Shown one piece after another: positions 1 to 11,200 of a stretch of DNA of 64,000 bases. Made by a program: the position numbers and the translations under genes. The notes below the pieces were generated by a model. The model made no database searches. It saw nothing but the letters and a program-made list of their open reading frames with translations, and was not told the origin of the DNA. Within the stretch, counting starts at the first letter, position 1, and each line of letters opens with the position of its first letter. The stretch lies in the IMG/VR virus record IMGVR_UViG_3300033145_003233, positions 434,001 to 498,000 of that record; one strand, written 5' to 3'.

Positions 1-1513
1 TAAAATCATAATAATTTCTTATCTCATTTACTGTCCTACTAAATTGATTGATAAAATCATGCATGTCCTCAAAAAGCATTGGTAGAATGACATAAAAATT
101 GGGTTTGATATAACCTTTATCTCCATATTTTAATTTTCCCTTTTCCCATTTCTTTCTATCATCATCGTGCAACCTACAAGCCCTTCCAAGATTCTGCAAT
201 AACTTTATTTTCTTACAATATCTAAAAAATAACACTCCAGTTAAAGCCGGAATATCTAACCCACAAGTCATGATGTCAATATGAAAAATAATAGCTCTAT
301 CCGATGATTCCAATCCCTTTATAGAATCCAGCATCCTTCCTTTACTTTTATTACTCACTTTTATATTCTCTTCTTCAGGCATGTCCACGCCCGTGAAAGA
401 GCTAATATAATATAATTTAATATCAGGATACTTTTTCCTCATTTTTTTCATCTCTTTGGAATCCCTTATCCCCTGCATCTCGGCACTGCCATTTGAAACA
501 ACTAACATCTTCGCTCCGATTTTATCAGGACAAAATGATTCTTCTTTTATCTTTTTTTCATGTTCTTCAAACGATTGAAAAATCACTTTAGTTTTTTCAT
601 CAAATTCTCTTTCCCTAATAGGGCTATTAATATCCACCCTATTTGCATTTAATATATCTCTATCAATATCATATGTTGTTAATTTAACATCTGTAGAAAC
701 AAAATGGACAAGAGGCTCTAATATAACCCCAAACTCAATCAAATCTCTTGGAGACATACGCCTACCAAAACCATTTTCATCTTTCTGCCCAAAAAGTTCA
801 TCACCATATATATCAGAATTATTCATTCCCCTACCCTTATATGTTTCTTTATCATCTACATTACCTAATTTTTCTGTGGCTGTCATAAATATCTTTTTCT
901 TGGCAATGATCTCTGTAGCAGAGAATAAGTCGTCTTTAGCCCTTTGAATACCTCGTGGGTCCTCTCTCCCAGGAAGATAATGAGCCTCATCAAAAATACA
1001 TAGGTCGAATTCTAATCCCGATTTTCTAACAACCCCATTAGAATGATATGTAGAAATGACAATAGTATTAACACCTATTCTTTTATTGTTCTCCGCAGTT
1101 TTCTTAATCAATCTAAAATCTAGAGTGCTGATTGGTTTATCCACCCCTGCCCCATTAATGCGATACAAAGCCTCTTCTATTTGATCCGTCATATTCCGAC
1201 TCATATTTTCTGAGCCAACAAAAATAAAATTGACAGGATTCGTCTGATTTTCAAAATATTTCACAAAATCAGATATCCACTGTTTATTAAGCATAAGTCT
1301 TGGAGTAAAGACTATCCCCAAAAACTGATTAAATTTATTTTCATAATTAGAAATTATTCTAAAAAAGACCTCTCTTCCAATCACCCCTTTTCCAGAACCT
1401 GTAGGAAGTATAATTTTACCCTTTTCAAAGTCATCTTTTAAAATACTTTCAACAAAAGATTCTTGGAAAGGATATAAAAAATCATTTTTACATCTATTTT
1501 TTCTTTTGGCCAC
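1..1513 (-). CDS. Superfamily 2 DEAH helicase (type III restriction Res / type ISP-like helicase), 3'-truncated by the window edge; not in the ORF track
   Basis: Manual translation from GTG at 1513 (GGGGG SD-like upstream) gives MAKRKNRCKNDFLYPFQESF...LPTGSGKG (Walker A), VFTPRLML (Ia), IFDEAH (II), MTAT (III), CGLDIP (V), QNLGRACR (VI). No stop was seen in the stretches translated, including positions 60 to 1. Confidence 0.93.
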   Translation of the reverse strand, partial: MAKRKNRCKNDFLYPFQESFVESILKDDFEKGKIILPTGSGKGVIGREVFFRIISNYENKFNQFLGIVFTPRLMLNKQWISDFVKYFENQTNPVNFIFVGSENMSRNMTDQIEEALYRINGAGVDKPISTLDFRLIKKTAENNKRIGVNTIVISTYHSNGVVRKSGLEFDLCIFDEAHYLPGREDPRGIQRAKDDLFSATEIIAKKKIFMTATEKLGNVDDKETYKGRGMNNSDIYGDELFGQKDENGFGRRMSPRDLIEFGVILEPLVHFVSTDVKLTTYDIDRDILNANRVDINSPIREREFDEKTKVIFQSFEEHEKKIKEESFCPDKIGAKMLVVSNGSAEMQGIRDSKEMKKMRKKYPDIKLYYISSFTGVDMPEEENIKVSNKSKGRMLDSIKGLESSDRAIIFHIDIMTCGLDIPALTGVLFFRYCKKIKLLQNLGRACRLHDDDRKKWEKGKLKYGDKGYIKPNFYVILPMLFEDMHDFINQFSRTVNEIRNYYDF

Positions 1514-2183
1514 TATCCCCCCTTTTTCTCAACTGATTTTTCCACGATTCGGCAAAAGAATTCCAGAAAATCCCATTGTCATCTACCCTTCTCCGGATAT
1601 CGCTTCTATTAACCTCTCTGACATCGCTCAACATATGCTCTTTTACATCATAATGAATTTTTTTACCACAATGGATAATAGTCATATTACAAGTATCTTT
1701 AATTCTATCCCTGCCATTTTTTAATTGACATTTTTCGTTAGGGTCAACTCCAAAGCCACCAGCTTCTTTACTCATCGTTGAAAGAGATCTAAAATTAGTA
1801 AGATGGTCTTTATTCGCAGTCAACTCATAGTTAGCTTGGCGATATTTAATCTGTATGGTATGTATCTTACCATTAGTCCCCAATCCAACAGAGTCCACTC
1901 CATAATCATCTTCAGAATCTATAAGTTCATAAGATTCTGGATCAATGCCAATTAACATATCCCCACCAAAGATACGAACTAACATCTCTACAAATAATTC
2001 AAAACCATCCCCCTTATACTTATTTAATATATCATCATCTATCTCTCCATCTCCCCCTGTTGCCTTCTTAATAGCTTGTTTCTCAAGTCGATAGGCAAAA
2101 GTGCTGAATTTAGAACATTCCTTTAAAAGCCCTATAGGATCAATACATCTTCTTAAAAACGGATGAGTTAGTTTAACAATCAC
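1494..2183 (-). CDS. PD-(D/E)XK (Mrr-like) restriction-endonuclease-fold protein
   Basis: GDGFELFVE helix followed by GVD-x12-IQIK, the D...(Q/E)xK catalytic pattern. GTG start with GGAG SD 7 nt upstream. Overlaps the helicase start by 20 nt. Confidence 0.7.
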   Translation of the reverse strand: MIVKLTHPFLRRCIDPIGLLKECSKFSTFAYRLEKQAIKKATGGDGEIDDDILNKYKGDGFELFVEMLVRIFGGDMLIGIDPESYELIDSEDDYGVDSVGLGTNGKIHTIQIKYRQANYELTANKDHLTNFRSLSTMSKEAGGFGVDPNEKCQLKNGRDRIKDTCNMTIIHCGKKIHYDVKEHMLSDVREVNRSDIRRRVDDNGIFWNSFAESWKNQLRKRGDSGQKKK

Positions 2184-2343: not shown

Positions 2344-3318
2344 CTACATAAATTTTACCCTACTGCGATCAATATCCCTTAATCTCTTATTATTTTTACA
2401 TATATTTTGCGCCCAAGAAAGACTATTTTCACTATTGCTATATATATCCTTGTATGATTTTTCTATCTGTAGATTGTTGGCTACCTCTACTTGCCTTGTC
2501 CCAAATGGATAAACCCTCCCGTCAAATACAGATAAATGCGAAGCCTCGGTCTCGATATATTCTTTACTGACTATAAGTAAAATACTTTTAGGAGATAAAG
2601 GAAAATGCAATTGCAATTTTTCGCTGGCCAATCCTTGTATCAAAGAATCTCCAAAAGCATCTACCACAGGGTTATCAGAAGTGTAAAAAGGCACATCAGC
2701 ACGATTAACTCCAAAAAACCAATAATACTTCTTTGAAGAAAAATTCTTACAAAAAATATCTGCCATATCAAAAATACTATACATGTGATTAAGTTTTATA
2801 TCATCATGATCTAAATTTAAATTACATTTTTCCATCCTCTTTTTTCCAACTATCTCCTCCACTCTATCCCTCATTCCATAAATAATATCTTCAAACTTCT
2901 TTTTTGATTCCTTGCCCCTGGTCCATTGGACTCCAAGATAAAAAGATATATCTCTCTTTATATTAAATGCTTCTTCCTCTCCATAAATAGATTTTAAACA
3001 TTTGATATTTTTATCAGTAAAAATCTCATCTATTTGTTTTACCCTACAAGCCATATTGCCTTCTATTTGAGACAGTAAATCTTCTACACAAAGAGAAGAT
3101 ATTAAAGAATAATTTTTTAAAAATTGCTCTGGCATAGTATAAAAATGCTTTTCTGTTATTTTATCTGAATCTGTAGATGTTTTTTTGATAATATCTTTTT
3201 CCTTATCATAATAAAAAATATCATATTGGTTAGGATTATATCTACTTTTTTTCGCCCATCTTTTTAAATACCAATTCGGGACAAGATGCTGATTTTTATT
3301 TCTATTACTATTGCTCAT
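2344..3318 (-). CDS. DUF4238 family protein
   Basis: N-terminal NQHLVPNWYLKRW, internal FYTSDNPV and FPLSPKSILLI match the recalled family motifs QHYVPxxYL, TSDNPV and PLSP. GGGAG SD. Confidence 0.8.
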   Translation of the reverse strand: MSNSNRNKNQHLVPNWYLKRWAKKSRYNPNQYDIFYYDKEKDIIKKTSTDSDKITEKHFYTMPEQFLKNYSLISSLCVEDLLSQIEGNMACRVKQIDEIFTDKNIKCLKSIYGEEEAFNIKRDISFYLGVQWTRGKESKKKFEDIIYGMRDRVEEIVGKKRMEKCNLNLDHDDIKLNHMYSIFDMADIFCKNFSSKKYYWFFGVNRADVPFYTSDNPVVDAFGDSLIQGLASEKLQLHFPLSPKSILLIVSKEYIETEASHLSVFDGRVYPFGTRQVEVANNLQIEKSYKDIYSNSENSLSWAQNICKNNKRLRDIDRSRVKFM

Positions 3319-3366
3319 TAAGCTAACTCCCTATAAATACAACTCACTATATTATATATCGGCTTT

Positions 3367-4680
3367 TTAACCTATCTGTAATTGCAGCTTTTTAATAGAT
3401 TCTTCTTTATCTTCATTATATTTAATTCTATGAAGAACAACACTATTCTCCCTACAAAACACCCCATCTAATTTATCTTTTTTTTGTGTCCTTTTAAATA
3501 ATTTTTCTACTTTTACCCTATCCTTACAACCAAACCCTATAGGTTCAAAATGCTGTATCCCATCATATTCTACCATAACTTTAACATTATTTTTCTCCAT
3601 CCAAAAATCACAATATCTCTTATGGTTATAATCTCTATATTTATCCCATATTTTTTTATGGGAAATAATATCCCAATCTTTAAAATATTTTTCTAAAATT
3701 TCTTTTACTTTACCCTCATTTTTATATCTACAAGCAGGACAACCATCACCCCTTCCTGTTCTATTTCTAATAACGGCTTCCCATATATGCCCTTGAGAGC
3801 ATACCCACCAAGCTTTTCTTGAACTACCCCGAGTAACAGTATTAGGTGTTAAATCTTGATTTTTTTTATAATCCCATTCTTTAGCTATATCTGGAAACAA
3901 AGTTGCTAAACAATTATCTTTACAAGTCTTTTGTCCAGAACAATAAGGGCAATTAGTCCCAACGCTTCTGCTAAGCGTAGTCGCTTGCCATTCATGCCCT
4001 TTCTCACATATCCACCATACTTTCTTTTTGCTATTTCTTGCAGTTATATTTTTAGGAGTCAAACTTCCATTTTTAACAGAATGCCATTCTTTAGCAACTA
4101 TAGGATTGAGAGTAGCTAAACAATTATCTTTACAAATCTTTTGACCGGCGCAACAAGGACAATTAGTTCCGCTATGTGTTCTACTAGATATCTTAGCTTT
4201 CCACCCATGACCATAAAAACATATCCACCATACTTTCTTTCCGCTGCCATGCACCACAGTTTTAGGAGATTCTCTTTTATTTTTCTTATAATCCCATTCC
4301 TCTGCTATCCTTGGAAATCTATTTTCCAAACAATTATCGTTAGAGACCCTATGCCCAGCACAATAAGGGCAACCATTACCGCCATGAGTCACATTAGTTC
4401 GACAATTGATAGAAGCTTGCCATCTATGTTTTATATTAGAAGAACAAGTCCAGAATGCCTGTTTATGACTACCACTCGTTAATTTTTTAGGATCTAACCC
4501 TAATTTCTTATTCTTTTCACAATCCCATTCCGTTTCAATTAGTTTTTTATGTGTTTCATAAACTGATACTTTTTTAACCCCAACGTGATAAAAATACTTA
4601 GCACAACATTTATGAGAACAATATTTTTTTCTCAATTTTTCTAATTCCTTACCACACCATAAACATTTTTTATTCATCAT
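3367..4680 (-). CDS. Zinc-ribbon (treble-clef, DUF4379-type) repeat protein with C-terminal Vsr-like/EDxHD-type endonuclease domain; homing-endonuclease-like
   Basis: N-terminal CxxC...YCSxxC finger, four EW..KN...W.C..GH.W......GCP.C repeats, and C-terminal YCDFW...VEYDGIQHF...LHRIKY. The start is probably ATG 4680 (GGGGGGTG SD) rather than the track start at 4710. Confidence 0.82.
   Translation of the reverse strand: MMNKKCLWCGKELEKLRKKYCSHKCCAKYFYHVGVKKVSVYETHKKLIETEWDCEKNKKLGLDPKKLTSGSHKQAFWTCSSNIKHRWQASINCRTNVTHGGNGCPYCAGHRVSNDNCLENRFPRIAEEWDYKKNKRESPKTVVHGSGKKVWWICFYGHGWKAKISSRTHSGTNCPCCAGQKICKDNCLATLNPIVAKEWHSVKNGSLTPKNITARNSKKKVWWICEKGHEWQATTLSRSVGTNCPYCSGQKTCKDNCLATLFPDIAKEWDYKKNQDLTPNTVTRGSSRKAWWVCSQGHIWEAVIRNRTGRGDGCPACRYKNEGKVKEILEKYFKDWDIISHKKIWDKYRDYNHKRYCDFWMEKNNVKVMVEYDGIQHFEPIGFGCKDRVKVEKLFKRTQKKDKLDGVFCRENSVVLHRIKYNEDKEESIKKLQLQIG
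3722..4555 (-). repeat. Four tandem ~66-aa zinc-ribbon repeats
   Basis: Repeated DNCLATLxPxIAKEWxxxKN and W.C..GH.W...GxxCPxC blocks in the translation. Confidence 0.9.
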
Positions 4681-4858
4681 CACGATTACACCCCCCATTA
4701 TATGCCACATCTTGCACTCTATTTATATCGACATGAATATTATCATTATATAATCTTCTAATTTCTCCCAAAATTTTATGATATGCCTCATCTGGATCTC
4801 TATAACTCAAAAATAAAGAGGCTAACAGACTAATTCTATCATTATTTTCTTTTAACAT
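4670..4858 (-). CDS. Small hypothetical protein (about 62 aa), first gene of the leftward cassette
   Basis: GGAG SD about 8 nt before ATG 4858. The track start at 4891 lies inside the palindrome/promoter. The stop overlaps the start region of the zinc-ribbon gene. Confidence 0.5.
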   Translation of the reverse strand: MLKENNDRISLLASLFLSYRDPDEAYHKILGEIRRLYNDNIHVDINRVQDVAYNGGCNRDDE

Positions 4859-4882
4859 TTCCATCTCTCCATATAAATATAA

Positions 4883-4915
4883 TAGTATCATTATAATAGT
4901 ATTATAATAATACTA
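4883..4915. promoter_or_regulatory. 33-bp imperfect palindrome, candidate operator
   Basis: TAGTATCATTATAATA-G-TATTATAATAATACTA, with 15 of 16 arm positions complementary. ATAATAGTAT is also repeated at 4879 and 4893. Confidence 0.6.
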
Positions 4916-4918
4916 CAA
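4890..4918 (-). promoter_or_regulatory. Probable sigma70 promoter for the leftward cassette
   Basis: TTGTAG (4918-4913), 17-nt spacer, TATAAT (4895-4890); overlapped by the palindrome. Confidence 0.5.
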
Positions 4919-4985
4919 TATTCCTTCTTTATTTTTAAGAAAATATCAAAAAAATTACGATATAATATAAATAATAGGAGAAAAG

Positions 4986-5135
4986 ATGGCTAAAGAAAAA
5001 AAAGATAAGAATATAGTTGTAATGGTTTCTCAGTCTATGTATAAAGATTTTATAAAATCTTGCGAGAAAGATTATCTAACAATGAGCGAATATTTAAGAG
5101 CATGTATTAGAGAAAAAATAAAAGAAAAGAAATAG
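4986..5135 (+). CDS. Ribbon-helix-helix (CopG/Arc-like) DNA-binding protein, 49 aa; not in the ORF track
   Basis: AGGAG SD at 4976-4980, ATG 4986, TAG ending 5135. MAKEKKDKNIVVMVSQSMYKDFIKSCEKDYLTMSEYLRACIREKIKEKK shows a beta strand (IVVMV), helix A and helix B (MSEYLRACI), typical of RHH proteins. Confidence 0.8.
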   Translation: MAKEKKDKNIVVMVSQSMYKDFIKSCEKDYLTMSEYLRACIREKIKEKK

Positions 5136-5142
5136 ACTATTC

Positions 5143-8100
5143 TTAATTATTTGTAGCTGAAGTTATTGTGATAATGGGAGTAGTAATTGTTGTGCCAAAA
5201 TCCAAACTGTCATGAGGCAGAACCTCGGCCCGATACTGCTGACCCACAAGCACAATACTATTATCTATTGTAGATGTATGAGTTCCCAGACTGGTAGTAA
5301 TATGGCCTCTGTAATCTTCTACATTATATGTAGTTAATAAATTACCATCATGATCATTAAAAATATAAACTGGATCAGCAGGCCATTCTGTTTCTCCTGG
5401 ATTTTTTCTATACCATCTAATTTCTGTCTGGTCAAATTGTCCACTTTCATCCACGTCGCCAATAAAATTTACCTCAAAATCCAGAAAATACCATGTTAAT
5501 ATTACATCATTATGTTCATCATGAACATTGCGAATATAAGACACATTAGAAACAGTAGGAAGGGCATTTTGAACCACAACCACAGGGCTTGTAATAATAT
5601 CCCCTACAACATTACCTGTTTTTGGTATAACCTGAACAAATATAGAGTTAAGCATTCTAAGGCCATAATCCCTATAACTTTCTGTTCCCACTTCATTAGG
5701 CCAAATTTCATGAATCGGAGCTTGACCTACTCCCCTATCCTCTCCATATATTCCTCTCTTAAAGACTTCATCATTAACATACCATATAATCTCTGATTGG
5801 TTTTCTTGTCCATCAGAGAAAAATACTGTGTCTATAGGAGGATAAATAATGGCCTTTAAATCACCAGCTAACCTACTAGTGATCTGACCTTCATTATCAG
5901 ACATTACTGTTATTTGATCTAAAACAGGAGTGGATTCTACAACTTCTGCCATATTAGATTTTACCCTAGAGCTATATAATTCCCCATCGCTTACTTGTAT
6001 CTCAAAATAAATCCTATCTCCTGAATTCAGTATGGAATCAGATTGTTTTTTTATCCATGTCTCAATATCCTGGATATTAGTTAAATCGTCAGGATATGAT
6101 AAAGAAGTATTAACATAAATAGGATCCATTGGATCTGCTATGTCATTCCATTTGGTTAGATTTTCTAAATAATTTATAACGCTTCCATTAATAAACCACC
6201 GTATTCTCCTTTGAGATATATCTTCTTCTTCGAAATTAGAATCATAATACACATAAGAACTCTCAATAGTGCTAAATCTATTAGAAGTTTCATTTTCAAT
6301 AGCCACAGACTGAGCTTCAGGGGCTGCTTTGGCTAATGGTGGTAACAAATCTTTCCCAGTAGTATATAAATAACCAATACCATATATCTCTAATTCATCT
6401 AATTTAGTTTTATTGGTTAATTTCATACCTATTTTATATTCTCCCGCATTAATAATACCTATCTTATAATCTCCATCTTGATAGTCAGAAGATAATGCAT
6501 AATTTAACACTACTATCCCATCCCTAGGATATAATCTATAATAATTAGTTGGAACAACTTCATCTGATTTGTTATATAGAAGAACAGCAGAGAACGGGTC
6601 CCATGAACCGTATTCTGTTTTTAGTGTGAAGAGATCAACTTTTGCAAGAGGTTCTTGTTGAAACTCTGCTATATCTTGAGAGAATCTTATGGGAATTACT
6701 ACTTTTCCATTTTGATTTACTGCCGGTTGAGAATCAAGAGAATAATCGTTCCAGTTGTGGGAATCAGATTTAGCAACTCCGACATCAATCTGATGATCAT
6801 TAATTTCATTTGCGTCTACCGCTAAAGTTATTTGATATGGCTGAACATCTACTTCTTCTTTGTTGAGATATAAATAAGCTACCTTATAAGCATTATATGT
6901 AATTTGAACAGAAGTAAGAGCAGGAGAATCTGGAGTGGCATCAGATACATTATCATTAATACTAGTAATCAACACTATCTTAAATTTTATATATCTTGCC
7001 AATAAATTTTCAAAATCAACCGCATCTGCATAAGTGTAATTAGCATCTATAGCTGTAAAATTATAACCATCAACGCTCGTCTCAATAGCCCATGTAGCAT
7101 TAGAATCCGAAGAAGGGATAGTAAAAGATATTGCGATGTGATTTATTAACGCCTCTTCTCCCAAATCAGCTATAAATTCATATGTCCCATACCCTAGAGA
7201 TCCCACTGTCTCTCTGTAAAATATCCCTATAATATCATCTAGATAAGCTTCATCATTTACCGTAAGAGCTTGACCCCCAGTTAAAAATGATAATTTATTT
7301 ATATTTTTTGTATCAGAAGAGTTAGCCTTAACAGACAAAGTTACTGGCTCTACAATCGCCATATTAGATATCAATACAGGAACATTTTTATCTCCATCAA
7401 TGTCATTAACTTCTGTAATAGCATTATCAAGAGAAGAGATAGAAACATTAGACTCATTATCAGTAAACAAATAAATGGTCTTTCTCTTATCATCAACATC
7501 ATTGTCAGATAAAACTCTTGAAGCGACAACGATTGCATCATACATAGTTGAAGCGCCAAAAGGAGTAAAATTCTGAAGTTTATTTATCTCATCGATAATT
7601 GTTGAACTAGAGCTAGTATTGGTTCCCAAGACAGAACTAACAGATGGAACCCATTCAGAATCATTATAACAATCTATAATAATATTGCTATTTGTTCTTT
7701 TCTTTGTTTTTTGGAACAAAGAAGTTACATCATTAACTTCTTCTTCTTGAGGACTCGTTCCTCTATCAACTGTTCTATTATAAAAAGAACTTCCATTGAG
7801 AGAATAAACAGTTACCTCAATTGATAATTTATATGGACTCCTTATTACTCCTGCCTCTATTTTTATAACAACTGGTTCCTTATTAGTATCTGTAATCTGC
7901 TCATCGGTTCTAATACCTCCCTGAGAAACGATATTGATATTAGCCACAGTAGCTTCCTCTATAGATGATGTCTCTTCAAATAAATCTTCTGAACGAGGCA
8001 ATATAGTTATAACACATCTGCCACTATTTACAGGGATAGAGTCCGAAGTAAAAAGAACAGGATAAACAACGGTTTTGTCTTCCAATTGATTTAAAGTTTC

Positions 8101-8262
8101 TGTTTCTGTTGTTGAAGATTGATCTCTGAATTTTAGAAATCCCCTTACAACCACAGTTAATGGTTCTGTTACATATCTACCACCCTTTTTAATATCTATA
8201 GGTATAGAGACAGATTGTTTCCCATCTATCTTGCAACTGATTGTTTTATATTCATTTCCCAT
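5143..8262 (-). CDS. Multi-domain virion/adhesion protein: C-terminal half of a vWA domain, jelly-roll-like domain, three Ig-like (IRWxxNG-type) domains
   Basis: GASTMYDAI...IYLFTDNESN...LSFLTGG (vWA second half); RYIKFKIVL...SPALTSVQITY; RRIRWFING, IIWYVND and EIRWYRK modules. Confidence 0.65.
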   Translation of the reverse strand: MGNEYKTISCKIDGKQSVSIPIDIKKGGRYVTEPLTVVVRGFLKFRDQSSTTETETLNQLEDKTVVYPVLFTSDSIPVNSGRCVITILPRSEDLFEETSSIEEATVANINIVSQGGIRTDEQITDTNKEPVVIKIEAGVIRSPYKLSIEVTVYSLNGSSFYNRTVDRGTSPQEEEVNDVTSLFQKTKKRTNSNIIIDCYNDSEWVPSVSSVLGTNTSSSSTIIDEINKLQNFTPFGASTMYDAIVVASRVLSDNDVDDKRKTIYLFTDNESNVSISSLDNAITEVNDIDGDKNVPVLISNMAIVEPVTLSVKANSSDTKNINKLSFLTGGQALTVNDEAYLDDIIGIFYRETVGSLGYGTYEFIADLGEEALINHIAISFTIPSSDSNATWAIETSVDGYNFTAIDANYTYADAVDFENLLARYIKFKIVLITSINDNVSDATPDSPALTSVQITYNAYKVAYLYLNKEEVDVQPYQITLAVDANEINDHQIDVGVAKSDSHNWNDYSLDSQPAVNQNGKVVIPIRFSQDIAEFQQEPLAKVDLFTLKTEYGSWDPFSAVLLYNKSDEVVPTNYYRLYPRDGIVVLNYALSSDYQDGDYKIGIINAGEYKIGMKLTNKTKLDELEIYGIGYLYTTGKDLLPPLAKAAPEAQSVAIENETSNRFSTIESSYVYYDSNFEEEDISQRRIRWFINGSVINYLENLTKWNDIADPMDPIYVNTSLSYPDDLTNIQDIETWIKKQSDSILNSGDRIYFEIQVSDGELYSSRVKSNMAEVVESTPVLDQITVMSDNEGQITSRLAGDLKAIIYPPIDTVFFSDGQENQSEIIWYVNDEVFKRGIYGEDRGVGQAPIHEIWPNEVGTESYRDYGLRMLNSIFVQVIPKTGNVVGDIITSPVVVVQNALPTVSNVSYIRNVHDEHNDVILTWYFLDFEVNFIGDVDESGQFDQTEIRWYRKNPGETEWPADPVYIFNDHDGNLLTTYNVEDYRGHITTSLGTHTSTIDNSIVLVGQQYRAEVLPHDSLDFGTTITTPIITITSATNN

Positions 8263-8264
8263 TT

Positions 8265-11200
8265 TTATATATCAAATATAATATCTACAGTACTTTCCTC
8301 CCTAGCCGTAGTATATCCTCCCACCAAATAAATATAAGGAGTTCCTGTTACTCCAGAATAAACAGCACTAGCACCATGCTTTGCTTTCAATAAAGAAGCC
8401 ATGGCTAACGATGGATTATCATCGTAACTGCTTAGATAAGAAACAGTAGAACCTTGAATAGATATTTTTTCTAATATATCAAGACTTGAATCATCATCAT
8501 TAGCTCCTCCCATTATATAATAATCAGAAGTATCATATGTAGACGGATCAAGATCATATCTAACCATTGCTGATTGGAATTTAGGAATAGGAAAATCTCC
8601 GAGCAAACCACTTCCAAAATTAATCCATTCTCCTGAGGAAGGGACAGTAAAAGATTGTGCTATATTAATATAAAAATCTTCTATTGGATAAATAAACTGA
8701 TCATCAGATTCTATGGCCCCATTAAACACTATAATTTTATTATCATAAATTAAAGTTAAAGGGAATATTCTCTGATAAGTGTTTAATTCATTAGTTCTTA
8801 AAGCACCAGAATATTCCCAGCTATCATCACCTATAGAATATCTTAAAATTCTTTTATTATAATTACGTATGCTAAAATTACTTGAACTTATTACAGCATC
8901 CTGTATTCCACCTATAATATATATATAATTATTAGAGAGCACATCACAATATTGAGCAGCACCTAAAGCCACTCCTGTTTTTTCTTCCCATGCTCCTCCA
9001 TCACCAATAGATGGCATATCAGATAGCTGCTCCCAGGCCCCTGTATCAGTATGATAAACTTCAACCAGAGAGCTTACAGATATTTGACCACCCGAAGTAG
9101 AATCTGCACCTATCCCCCCTATTAAATATATATCATTATTTACAACAACAGACATACCTCCAAATCTATGAGATAACATAGGAGGACCAGTAGTCCATGT
9201 TTCTGTTAAAATATCATATATTTCATTCTTGTTAGACACATCTAAACTATTATTTTTCAACCCTCCCATAACATAAATCTTATTCCCTACCACACCAATA
9301 AATGAATCTCCTCTATTTTCCGACATACCAGGAACATGAACCCATTCATTATCAGAAATATTATATCTTGCCATAGTTGATGAAAATGGAGTTTCTTCTA
9401 TTATCTCAGCATCTTCATCAAGAACACTAGGTTCATCTACTAAATTAGGAAGAGTTACAATCTCATCTTTATAATCCAACGTAAGATTAAAAATAGCCCC
9501 GACATGCCTATCTGTTTTTTCATTTTCATCGTAAACAGAATATATTTCTAGATTCTCAGTTATACTATCTTCCTCTGGTATTTTTGTAGCGGCAACAGTC
9601 ACATCCACATAACTATATCCCTCATCTCCATCAGTTTGAGTATAATAAATACTACTGCCAGCTAAAAAGAAATTATTGCTAGAATTATTTCCCATAGCAG
9701 TATAAACAGGAGTGCCATCTGGAACAGGCTCTCCTTTCCATGATACTTGGACTCTAATATCTATATCAGAATTATGAAGCAACAAGGTATCATTATCTTC
9801 ATCTCGAAAACTATTATTACCTACCTCAGTCACAACTCCAACTAAATAATCATCATCTGGATCTCCATCAGATTCACTATAAAAATAATTAGTTACTCTT
9901 CTCCACCTCGCACTTATAGATAATGGTTCTGCCAAACAAATTGGACAAGGTGGGACTCCATTATAAAAAGTTCCTCCTCCAGATAGTACCAGCGGCTGAT
10001 CATTAACAAACAGAGTTGTTGTACCAGAAATATAAATAACCGGATTCCATTCAGGCAAATCGCAGTTCGTCAACATTCCACTATTTCGACCAAGACATAG
10101 ACAATCATTTATTTCCTTATCTCTATCACATTCCCCCTCTGGCACATATATTCTACCAGCACCAGGTACAAATTTATTAACCCTTATATAGATATAAGTG
10201 ATATCTGATTCTTCAGCATCATTTAATTCTATAAATGCGCTACCATTATCTATAAAACCATCATCGCCCACTGTCAAATAACGACTTCCTGTATATGAAT
10301 CTATTTCTTCATAAATCTCTCCATGCAATATCTCTACTTCATTGCCCCCTCCATTTATCTGCACAACCTGTCCAGAATTAAGCATTAATTCCTGCAAGTC
10401 ATCCTGAGTAGCACAGCTTCTAAAACAAGTAGCAGATGCAAAATCAGAAGAAAGAGCCACAGCTGGATTTCTACTAATTTTAATACGCTTATAATGAGAA
10501 CCATCTGCCCATAAAGGATTTTGATCGGCTATCATCCATCCACCACCACCCCATGTCTGAGTAAGCCCTGTTCCTCTCCACCCTCCATCTATCTCCATTA
10601 AAAACCTAGCTTTAAATTTATCATACTCAAGAGGATTATATCTTAATGACACAAGCTGTTTTGCACTAGCTGTCAATCCTTCATAAACTACAGTTACACT
10701 TATTTCATGAGTCTCATCCATCTCACTGTCACTTTTCGGAATAGGCCCTAGAAATACATTCCTAGCTACTCCGCTTCTGGTATAAGAATATACACCATTA
10801 GTAAGAGGGACATTATCAATAGAATAAATAGTTCTAACCTCTTGCCCTTGCAACTGAGAGATACCCCATTGAACAATAGTTTGATCAGAAGGATAAATAA
10901 TCAAAGAACGATCATAATCATTAGTCTCATAATTAGGGTAATCAGGATTAACAATAAATACTGTAGATCGTTGCTCAGACACATCTCTACCATCAACTTT
11001 AGGAACAGAAGCCTGAATATCCATTTTAAGAACACTTTGGAATAATATATATATATCTTTTATAGACGAATAACCTGCTTGAGATGCCTTTACAAACAAC
11101 CTAACTGCCTGAGGCATATCTGGAGCATACAAAGGGATATCAACATATGAAATAGGAGTTTGAACTATTGCCCCGCCATGCCCCACTTGCTCTTCAATTC

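What the first reader, a model, noticed from the sequence alone, without database searches (positions are those of the whole stretch)
4670..5135. Hidden RHH regulator facing a palindromic operator over the cassette promoter
Seen: a 49-aa RHH gene with a good SD is the only credible plus-strand gene in 64 kb. It is divergent from the nuclease cassette, and between them a 33-bp palindrome (4883-4915) covers the spacer and -10 of a TTGTAG-N17-TATAAT promoter. Established: RHH dimers and tetramers repress by binding inverted or direct repeats over promoters. Inference: a compact switch that controls potentially toxic nuclease or defence genes.
Basis: partly seen in the sequence, partly recalled or inferred. 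Interest (0 to 1): 0.62.

Follow-up and report, generated by a model that had tools for sequence, protein, structure and literature searches.

The report
RHH repressor guarding a phage homing-nuclease cassette
A real 49-residue DNA-binding protein gene in a 548-kb phage faces a conserved palindrome in front of a selfish nuclease gene, and is one of a family of small regulators that accompany mobile nucleases, a kind of control recently shown for bacterial transposons.

Summary
The window lies in a 547,943-bp virus record. The 49-aa ORF (4986-5135, +) is a real gene. It has orthologues at 71-89% identity in the same layout, is under strong purifying selection, matches RHH structures by profile, and models as an RHH-type homodimer. 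The palindrome (4883-4915) is one of two of its quality in 548 kb. Its core (4892-4906, TATAAT-N3-ATTATA) is the best-conserved 15 nt of the intergenic alignment. The outer arms are specific to this genome. The TTGTAG-N17-TATAAT promoter is present but no better than chance.

What the RHH faces is not a defence cassette. It is a two-gene insert: a conserved 62-aa ORF and a 437-aa nuclease with four zinc-ribbon repeats and a PD-(D/E)xK domain. A related 461-kb phage lacks this insert at the same site.

All five RHH paralogues in this genome sit beside homing-endonuclease-like genes. Relatives elsewhere sit directly upstream of HNH, DUF4379, LAGLIDADG and TnpB-like nuclease genes. Each RHH subtype has its own palindrome.

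Best reading: an Arc-like repressor of a selfish nuclease operon. Binding and repression are untested. This parallels Arc of IS605 (2026 preprint), so it is a new variant of a known kind.

The parts
4986..5135 (+). 49-aa ribbon-helix-helix (Arc/CopG-like) gene; the strand is about residues 9-14 and two helices follow
   Evidence: Five orthologues at 71-89% identity in the same layout. pN 0.05-0.16 against pS 0.44-0.75. The profile hits PDB ORF56 of pRN1 (E 3.7e-4) and the NikR RHH domain (E 0.008). Pfam NikA-like E 0.002, below the cut-off. Homodimer model ipSAE 0.60 against a best control of 0.01.
4976..4980 (+). Shine-Dalgarno AGGAG of the RHH gene, 5 nt before the ATG
   Evidence: Read directly; conserved in all orthologous loci.
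4955..4966 (+). TTACGATATAAT box upstream of the RHH gene; CGATA is invariant in orthologues. Candidate -10 region of the RHH's own promoter (inferred).
   Evidence: Invariant CGATA columns in alignment A1. The same 12-mer lies upstream of paralogue P5. CGATA-type boxes lie upstream of RHH genes in L030, L042, L044 and L045.
4883..4915 (.). 33-bp palindrome (16-nt arms, centre G4899, one mismatch); proposed RHH operator
   Evidence: An imperfect extension reaches 4876-4922 (23-nt arms, 87% complementary).
4892..4906 (.). Conserved operator core, TATAAT-AGT-ATTATA
   Evidence: Highest-scoring 15-nt window of the 199-column alignment of six loci (mean pairwise identity 0.889). L025 carries a mirrored change at the third position of each arm; L036 keeps both arms with a different 3-nt centre.
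4917..4936 (-). A-rich AAAGAAGGAAT motif, read on the minus strand towards the nuclease operon, just upstream of the palindrome
   Evidence: Related AAAGAAGGAtT or AAATAAAGGAtT motifs stand upstream of the palindrome, pointing towards the nuclease operon, at P2, P3, P4, L020-L025, L028, L030, L031, L041-L046. Function unknown.
4890..4918 (-).
   Evidence: Present but not listed by the scan, with hits at chance level. Weak against the genome's own consensus.
4670..4858 (-). Conserved 62-aa ORF, first gene of the nuclease operon; its end overlaps the nuclease start by 11 nt. Function unknown.
   Evidence: Orthologues in L020, L022, L023, L025, L031, L035 and L036, and a paralogue at P3. Three-helix model, pLDDT 81. 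No Pfam, Atlas or Foldseek match.
3367..4680 (-). 437-aa homing-endonuclease-like nuclease: four DUF4379 treble-clef zinc-ribbon repeats plus a C-terminal PD-(D/E)xK domain (3370-3720)
   Evidence: Pfam DUF4379 E 1.1e-66, 4 stretches. PHROGs annotated as HNH, homing and intron-encoded endonucleases. C-terminal model pLDDT 88. Foldseek matches: Bax1 nuclease E 3.7e-4, then at weaker E-values the R2 enzyme, McrC, Hjc and I-Bth0305I.
5143..8262 (-). 1039-aa backbone gene that marks one edge of the insert; convergent with the RHH gene, with a 7-nt gap
   Evidence: 46% identical homologue in the 461-kb phage G001, where the RHH/62-aa/nuclease trio is absent.
2344..3318 (-). DUF4238 backbone gene that marks the other edge of the insert
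   Evidence: Pfam DUF4238 E 5.8e-29. Its homologue follows the structural gene in G001 without the cassette.

Best explanation
The 49-aa protein is an Arc/CopG-type ribbon-helix-helix dimer carried by a free-standing homing-endonuclease-like cassette that sits in a huge phage's structural-gene region. I infer three steps. First, it binds the palindromic operator (core TATAAT-N3-ATTATA at 4892-4906, with genome-specific mirrored flanks out to 4883-4915). This operator lies 25-57 nt upstream of the start codon of the 62-aa ORF. Second, by binding there it represses transcription of the two-gene operon (62-aa protein plus DUF4379/PD-(D/E)xK nuclease). Third, this keeps a potentially harmful selfish nuclease at a low level. 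It belongs to a family of small RHH regulators that travel with mobile nucleases, either divergent from them as here or as the first gene of an RHH-nuclease operon.

Shown: the gene is real, it has an RHH fold signature, the dimer model passes its controls, the palindrome is rare, its core is conserved, the RHH is linked to nuclease genes, and the cassette is an indel.

Inferred: binding, repression and the position of the promoter.
For: Gene and fold.

Palindrome beyond chance, with the core as the best-conserved intergenic element.

Symmetry is kept when the sequence changes. L025 carries a mirrored change in both arms. L036 has the same arms with a different centre. L043 has a flipped centre base..

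Subtype-specific palindromes:
- NIVVMV strand with TATAAT-N3-ATTATA, at 8 loci.
- K(I/L)(I/V)NFA strand with TATAAGAAA and TTTCT(T/C)ATA half-sites, at P3 and L031.
- EEIRVMV strand with TTCTGTAaTACAGAA at P2, P4, L028, L041, L043 and L046, whatever nuclease follows.

Each palindrome occurs in the genome only at its own RHH locus.

Linkage to nuclease genes:
- All 5 paralogues in this genome lie beside HEG-like genes.
- The same holds in G001 and G002.
- On metagenome contigs the RHH lies next to HNH, DUF4379, LAGLIDADG_3 and TnpB-like genes.

The cassette is absent between the same flanking genes in G001.

Precedent: Arc RHH proteins bind and repress the tnpB/tnpA promoter of IS605 elements, and are noted next to homing endonucleases (bioRxiv 10.64898/2026.09.24.754181). 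T4 intron endonucleases are kept low by operator binding over their promoters (PMC2988022).
Against: - There are no binding, transcript or expression data; no sequencing run was listed.
- The proposed promoter is no better than chance, and its -35 is not conserved.
- The conserved arms are themselves TATAAT hexamers on both strands, so conservation could reflect promoter -10 boxes rather than a protein site.
- The outer arms of the 33-bp palindrome are not conserved.
- Palindromes at P3 and at P2/P4 are only marginal on their own (43 and 73 of 1000 shuffles). None stands out at P5.
- One homologue (LR756511.1) has no recognisable nuclease neighbour.
- Two HNH genes of this genome have no RHH.
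Confidence: 0.6

Rival explanations
1. The conserved palindrome is not a protein operator. It is two back-to-back -10 hexamers (TATAAT on each strand) of divergent promoters. The RHH binds elsewhere or regulates something else.
For: The conserved arms are exactly TATAAT and ATTATA with a variable 3-nt centre. TATAAT is the -10 used by this genome's own promoters.
Against: No TTGA(A/C)A-type -35 stands at 16-17 nt from either hexamer. The other RHH subtypes have non-TATAAT palindromes (TTCTGTAaTACAGAA; TATAAGAAA half-sites) at the equivalent place. The W-specific mirrored extension to 16-nt arms is hard to explain by -10 boxes. An operator that overlaps a -10 would look the same, so the two readings are not exclusive.
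Confidence: 0.15
2. The RHH serves homing rather than repression. It marks or protects the nuclease's recognition site in the phage's own DNA (self-immunity), or it supplies target specificity to the nuclease.
For: Tight physical linkage to nucleases of several classes. In I-TevI, operator and homing site resemble each other (PMC2988022).
Against: Each palindrome occurs only once, beside its own RHH gene, not at other genome sites. The nucleases carry their own DNA-binding repeats (DUF4379 x4). The same RHH-plus-operator block precedes unrelated nucleases, including RNA-guided TnpB, which needs no protein specificity factor.
Confidence: 0.1
3. The RHH is an antitoxin-like protein that neutralises the nuclease or the 62-aa protein by direct binding, as in type II toxin-antitoxin pairs.
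For: RHH-first operons with overlapping stop and start codons at P2, P4, P5, L030, L041-L046 resemble TA gene order. The 94-aa (95-codon) ORF upstream of the third DUF4379 nuclease has a weak Pfam CopG_antitoxin hit (E 0.021).
Against: The 49-aa protein is a bare RHH domain with no C-terminal extension that could wrap a toxin. Here it is on the opposite strand with its own Shine-Dalgarno.
Confidence: 0.07
4. The adjacency is incidental. The RHH is a general phage regulator, for example of the convergent giant structural operon by transcriptional interference, and is unrelated to the nuclease.
For: It is convergent with the 1039-aa gene with only a 7-nt gap, and no terminator was found. A homologue in LR756511.1 has no nuclease neighbour.
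Against: All 5 paralogues, and most relatives, lie beside mobile nucleases in different genomic contexts. The RHH, the 62-aa ORF and the nuclease are present or absent together relative to G001.
Confidence: 0.05

Closest known systems
Arc RHH repressors of IS605-family transposons (Moon et al., bioRxiv 10.64898/2026.09.24.754181)
   Same: A roughly 50-aa RHH protein encoded inside a compact mobile element. It is often divergent from the nuclease gene across an intergenic promoter region, which it binds and represses. The authors note Arc homologues next to homing endonucleases. A relative of this RHH (L046) sits directly upstream of a TnpB-like gene.
   Different: Here the element is a free-standing homing-endonuclease-like cassette in a 548-kb phage, with no TnpA or TnpB. 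The protein nuclease is DUF4379 plus PD-(D/E)xK. An extra conserved 62-aa gene is present. Homology to the tested Arc proteins was not checked, and nothing has been tested experimentally.
Controller (C) proteins and C-boxes of restriction-modification systems
   Same: A small dimeric regulator gene immediately upstream of, or overlapping, an endonuclease gene, with a palindromic operator in front. Thought to limit or time nuclease expression (established knowledge; the RHH-first operons have this layout).
   Different: C proteins are helix-turn-helix proteins, not RHH. There is no methyltransferase partner here. The window's copy is divergent, not co-directional.
Autorepression of T4 intron homing endonucleases (I-TevI)
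   Same: Expression of a phage homing endonuclease is held down by protein binding to an operator that overlaps its promoter (PMC2988022).
   Different: In T4 the endonuclease itself is the repressor. Here a separate RHH gene is proposed to do it.
ORF56 of Sulfolobus plasmid pRN1 and CopG plasmid copy-control RHH proteins
   Same: Closest solved sequence relative by profile (2k9i/3ft7, E 3.7e-4). A minimal RHH of about 50 aa.
   Different: Those regulate plasmid replication genes. The similarity is at fold and superfamily level only (NCBIfam ORF56 E 0.039, far below the cut-off).

Membership tests
Ribbon-helix-helix (Arc/MetJ/CopG) superfamily | A domain of about 45 aa with an N-terminal beta-strand followed by two helices, detectable by sequence profile | tested here: met
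   The profile of 10 family members hits ORF56 (E 3.7e-4), the NikR RHH domain (E 0.008), ParG and AvtR. Paralogues hit Arc-like and CopG-like PHROGs.
Ribbon-helix-helix (Arc/MetJ/CopG) superfamily | Intertwined homodimer whose two strands pair antiparallel to form the DNA-reading ribbon | tested here: met
   Model only. ipSAE 0.60 in three runs against a best control of 0.01. The mark was reached by 20 of 30 solved homodimers and 1 of 23 single chains. Runs agree in at least 87% of contacts; pLDDT is at least 78. The closest contacts are residues 10-13 of one copy with 9-14 of the other, and helix 2 with helix 2. A pass may reflect likeness to solved RHH dimers.
Ribbon-helix-helix (Arc/MetJ/CopG) superfamily | Score above a curated family threshold (Pfam or NCBIfam) | tested here: not met
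   Best Pfam hit is NikA-like at 18.7 bits against a cut-off of 27. NCBIfam ORF56 scores 14 bits against 50. It is a superfamily member by profile and fold, but belongs to no curated family.
Ribbon-helix-helix (Arc/MetJ/CopG) superfamily | Sequence-specific binding to inverted or tandem repeats | not testable with these tools
   Only indirect: a rare palindrome with a conserved core, and palindromes that differ by RHH subtype.
Arc of IS605-family transposons | Encoded within an IS605 element beside tnpA and/or tnpB | tested here: not met
   The window's neighbours are a 62-aa ORF and a DUF4379/PD-(D/E)xK nuclease. A relative (L046) does precede a TnpB-like gene. The window's RHH works like Arc but is not an IS605 component.
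Free-standing homing endonuclease cassette | Nuclease catalytic domain joined to modular DNA-binding repeats | tested here: met
   DUF4379 x4. The C-terminal domain has a PD-(D/E)xK fold. It hits PHROGs annotated as homing and intron-encoded endonucleases.
Free-standing homing endonuclease cassette | Presence/absence polymorphism between the same flanking genes in related genomes | tested here: met
   G001 has the structural-gene and DUF4238 homologues without the trio. G002 and L020 have the trio at that place. A paralogous trio lies in a different context at genome 426-428 kb.
Free-standing homing endonuclease cassette | Site-specific cleavage of the cassette-free allele, and homing | not testable with these tools
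Type II toxin-antitoxin RHH antitoxin | C-terminal extension that binds and neutralises the toxin; co-directional operon | tested here: not met
   The protein is 49 aa and ends with the second helix. The gene is on the opposite strand.
R-M controller (C) protein | Helix-turn-helix fold; partner methyltransferase | tested here: not met
   The fold signature is RHH. No methyltransferase lies in the cassette.

The most novel reading that the evidence does not exclude
A portable control unit (A-rich AAGGAtt motif, palindromic operator and small RHH gene) has been joined repeatedly to at least five unrelated classes of selfish nuclease: HNH, DUF4379/PD-(D/E)xK, DUF4379/HNH, LAGLIDADG and TnpB-like. 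The RHH strand and its palindrome have diversified into separate specificities, so several cassettes can coexist in one 548-kb phage genome without cross-talk. That would make these RHH proteins a general governor of mobile nucleases in huge phages, not a one-off regulator.
Probability: 0.35. Interest if true: 0.65.

Novelty: new variant of a known kind. Interest (0 to 1): 0.48.

Why it matters
Homing-endonuclease genes are common in phage genomes and shape recombination between phages, yet little is known about how free-standing ones are kept from harming their carrier. If these RHH-operator pairs are repressors, three things follow.
- The principle just shown for IS605 transposons (a tiny RHH keeps the element's nuclease quiet) would extend to protein-only homing endonucleases in huge phages.
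- It would explain a class of unannotated micro-genes of about 50 aa.
- It would give a set of natural, probably orthogonal repressor-operator pairs of minimal size that can be tested directly by gel shift and reporter assays.

Tried and rejected
- blastn of 3300-8300 against the phage collection found no match.
- For public sequencing runs, none was listed, so expression and transcript ends could not be examined and read laying was not used.
- The 62-aa ORF has no Pfam or NCBIfam family, no Atlas hit and no Foldseek match with E <= 0.001. Its function is left open.
- The nuclease C-terminus gave nothing against PDB by sequence. Only the fold search worked.
- A 94-aa (95-codon) ORF upstream of the third DUF4379 nuclease (genome 389320-389607) looked RHH-like by eye. 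It gave only a weak CopG_antitoxin hit (E 0.021) and no profile-profile match to the RHH family. It is not counted.
- A third genome copy of TTACGATATAAT lies inside a coding region and is taken as chance.
- The idea that AAGAAn at -35 defines a phage-specific promoter is not enriched genome-wide and was dropped.
- A genome-wide search for the AAGGAtt motif found only scattered, Shine-Dalgarno-like copies on the coding strand.
- A terminator reading of the palindrome was rejected. No terminator-like site was found, and the conserved part is a pure A/T stem of 6-7 bp.
- The viral-contig scan with the RHH profile gave a single locus.
- The homologue in LR756511.1 has no recognisable nuclease beside it.
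Full report
CONTEXT. The window is bases 434001-498000 of a single 547,943-bp virus record with 33% G+C. Reading TAG or TGA as sense was not needed: under table 11 the window reads as one unbroken run of very large minus-strand ORFs. Those ORFs reach 1039, 2035, 1958, 1971 and more than 3824 aa. From about 100 kb onward almost all long ORFs of the genome are on the minus strand.

THE OBSERVATION.
- The 49-codon ORF (4986-5135, +) has AGGAG five nt before its ATG.
- It is the only + strand ORF of 30 aa or more in the 64 kb that is not buried under a long minus-strand ORF.
- The palindrome has 16-nt arms (4883-4898 and 4900-4915) around G4899, with one mismatched pair.
- Only two palindromes of that quality exist in the whole genome.
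- None of 1000 dinucleotide shuffles of the 17%-GC intergenic region reached its score.
- TTGTAG-N17-TATAAT is there on the minus strand and lies under the palindrome. The -35 matches the consensus at 3 of 6 positions, so the scan did not list it.
- Promoter-like hits in the region are at shuffle level.
- This genome's own non-coding regions show a clear TTGA(A/C)A-N16/17-TATAAT signal, and against that TTGTAG is weak.

IS THE ORF A GENE, AND IS IT AN RHH?
- The word search found five proteins at 71-89% identity.
- Their contigs have the same layout. A long minus-strand gene converges on the RHH, and the RHH is divergent from a roughly 60-aa ORF followed by a DUF4379 protein.
- Against these orthologues pN is 0.05-0.16 and pS is 0.44-0.75, so the frame is under purifying selection.
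- Curated families do not reach threshold: Pfam NikA-like scores 18.7 bits against 27 and NCBIfam ORF56 scores 14 against 50.
- A profile of ten family members hits solved RHH proteins: ORF56 of pRN1 (E 3.7e-4), the NikR RHH domain (E 0.008), ParG and AvtR.
- A two-copy model scored ipSAE 0.60 in three runs against a best control of 0.01. The mark was reached by 20 of 30 solved homodimers and 1 of 23 single chains. The runs agree in at least 87% of contacts and pLDDT is at least 78.
- The tightest contacts pair residues 10-13 of one copy with 9-14 of the other, and helix 2 with helix 2. That is the RHH arrangement. The pass may partly reflect memory of solved RHH dimers.

WHAT IT FACES.
- The mechanical 73-aa ORF most likely starts at ATG 4858 (62 aa), six nt after GGAGAG, as in all orthologues.
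- Its end overlaps the start of the nuclease gene (3367-4680) by 11 nt.
- The 62-aa protein is conserved (47-58% identity) and models as three helices. It matches nothing known.
- The nuclease has four DUF4379 treble-clef repeats.
- Its C-terminal domain folds with pLDDT 88. The best Foldseek match is the Bax1 nuclease (E 3.7e-4). Weaker matches include the R2 retrotransposon enzyme, McrC, Holliday-junction resolvases and the catalytic domain of I-Bth0305I. The domain is therefore PD-(D/E)xK-type.
- In the 461-kb phage G001, the homologue of the 1039-aa gene is followed by two other ORFs and then the DUF4238 homologue. There is no RHH, 62-aa ORF or nuclease.
- The trio is therefore a discrete insert. 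The DUF4238 gene belongs to the backbone. The Mrr-like and helicase genes further on were not traced in G001 and show no link to the RHH.
- Nothing indicates a defence system.

CONSERVATION OF THE PALINDROME. I aligned six orthologous intergenic regions.
- The most conserved 15-nt window is 4892-4906, TATAAT-AGT-ATTATA. Its mean pairwise identity is 0.889, above the start-codon regions.
- The outer arms are not conserved. In this genome they arise from a local 14-nt repeat.
- Changes keep the symmetry. L025 carries a mirrored change at the third position of each arm. L036 keeps both arms with a different 3-nt centre.
- A further TATAAT-like unit just before AATCC is also conserved.
- Because the arms are TATAAT on both strands, a reading as two -10 boxes cannot be excluded. 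I keep it as the main rival.

THE WIDER PATTERN. The genome holds four paralogues of the RHH.
- All five copies lie beside homing-endonuclease-like genes.
- P3 (genome 427867-428037) repeats the whole divergent trio. Its nuclease is 50% identical and it has its own palindrome of TATAAGAAAA-type arms at the equivalent place.
- P2, P4 and P5 are the first gene of an operon whose second gene hits PHROGs annotated as HNH endonucleases.
- Two other HNH genes in this genome have no RHH.
- In G001, an RHH overlaps a zinc-ribbon HNH gene.
- In G002, one RHH precedes a frameshifted HNH gene. Another, of P3 type, is divergent from a 59-aa ORF plus a DUF4379-HNH protein.
- Metagenome contigs add RHH genes directly upstream of an HNH gene (L041), DUF4379 nucleases (L042, L045), a LAGLIDADG_3 protein (L043; 34.5 bits) and a TnpB-like protein (L046; Cas12f1-like TNB, 56 bits).
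- Six loci carry RHH proteins with the EEIRVMV strand. All six carry AAATAAAGGAtTTTG followed by the 15-nt palindrome TTCTGTAaTACAGAA upstream of the RHH gene, whichever nuclease follows.
- Each palindrome occurs in this genome only at its own locus.
- The counter-example is LR756511.1, a 595-kb uncultured phage. Its homologue has no recognisable nuclease neighbour.

MECHANISM. The simplest account is that each RHH dimer, or a pair of dimers, binds its own palindrome at the head of the nuclease operon and represses it. In the co-directional operons it would also autoregulate.
- The aligned central strand residue differs between subtypes: V, N or R. That this residue sets specificity is my inference only.
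- The bare 49-aa size argues against an antitoxin-like protein-binding role.
- The single-copy palindromes, and the presence of the same unit in front of an RNA-guided nuclease, argue against a role in target choice.

COMPARISON WITH WHAT IS KNOWN.
- A 2026 preprint shows that Arc RHH proteins of IS605 elements bind the intergenic promoter and repress tnpB. It notes Arc homologues next to homing endonucleases.
- T4 intron endonucleases are held down by operator binding over their own promoters.
- R-M controller proteins have the same gene order but a helix-turn-helix fold.
- This locus works like these systems. It is not an IS605 component, a C protein or a TA antitoxin (see the membership table).
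- I rate it a new variant of a known kind: RHH control attached to free-standing homing-endonuclease cassettes in a huge phage, with several subtypes in one genome.

LIMITS.
- No expression or binding data exist.
- The host is unknown.
- The promoter is not located.
- The survey of relatives used word- and pattern-based searches and is not exhaustive.

Noticed in passing
window 3370-3720 (-) compared with L020:1379-1729, L021 and L031:1930-3150: Cassettes at the orthologous place carry the same DUF4379 repeat array but different catalytic domains. This genome has PD-(D/E)xK; L020, L021 and L031 have HNH. This looks like a catalytic-domain swap within one homing-endonuclease lineage.
   Followed up: partly
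genome 375683-376712 (outside the window; locus L005) and L028:3146-3726: Two RHH-linked HNH genes are split into two overlapping frames. The N-terminal zinc-ribbon part and the C-terminal HNH part are in different frames. This could be decay or a programmed frameshift.
   Followed up: no
genome 343802-343833 (outside the window): This is the only other palindrome in the 548-kb genome with 16-nt arms and at most one mismatch. Its context was not examined.
   Followed up: no
whole genome, non-coding segments: TATAAT is preceded at 16-17 nt by TTGAAA (17 times) or TTGACA (9 times), often with a C before it. The phage therefore carries a set of canonical sigma-70-type promoters. Strong AGGAG-type ribosome sites are also used.
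   Followed up: partly
L021:1500-1848: In this relative the 62-aa ORF is reduced to its last 20 or so codons behind a stop. The DUF4379-HNH gene and the RHH remain.
   Followed up: no
window 4917-4936 and the equivalent places in P2, P3, P4, L020-L046: An A-rich motif ending in AAGGA(A/T)T always lies just upstream of the palindrome and points towards the nuclease operon. It is not a frequent genome-wide motif. Its role is unknown; a promoter element or a cassette end are possibilities.
   Followed up: partly
window 5143-63999 (-): An uninterrupted run of very large minus-strand ORFs (1039, 2035, 645, 1958, 1971, 701, 899, 1331, 1078, 1119, 1320 and more than 3824 aa) with almost no intergenic space. 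Only the first was examined; it gave a weak VWA_2 hit.
   Followed up: no
genome 431185-431388 (-), outside the window: A 67-aa ORF resembles the C-terminal part of the 237-aa ORF that follows the structural gene in G001 at the cassette-free site. This suggests rearrangement of the region around the two cassettes.
   Followed up: no
window 1494-2183 (-) and 2-1513 (-): An Mrr_cat_2-like protein (weak, E 0.033; PHROG 7683 E 2.3e-19) and a ResIII/DEAD helicase lie downstream of the DUF4238 gene. They might form a unit of their own, unrelated to the RHH.
   Followed up: no
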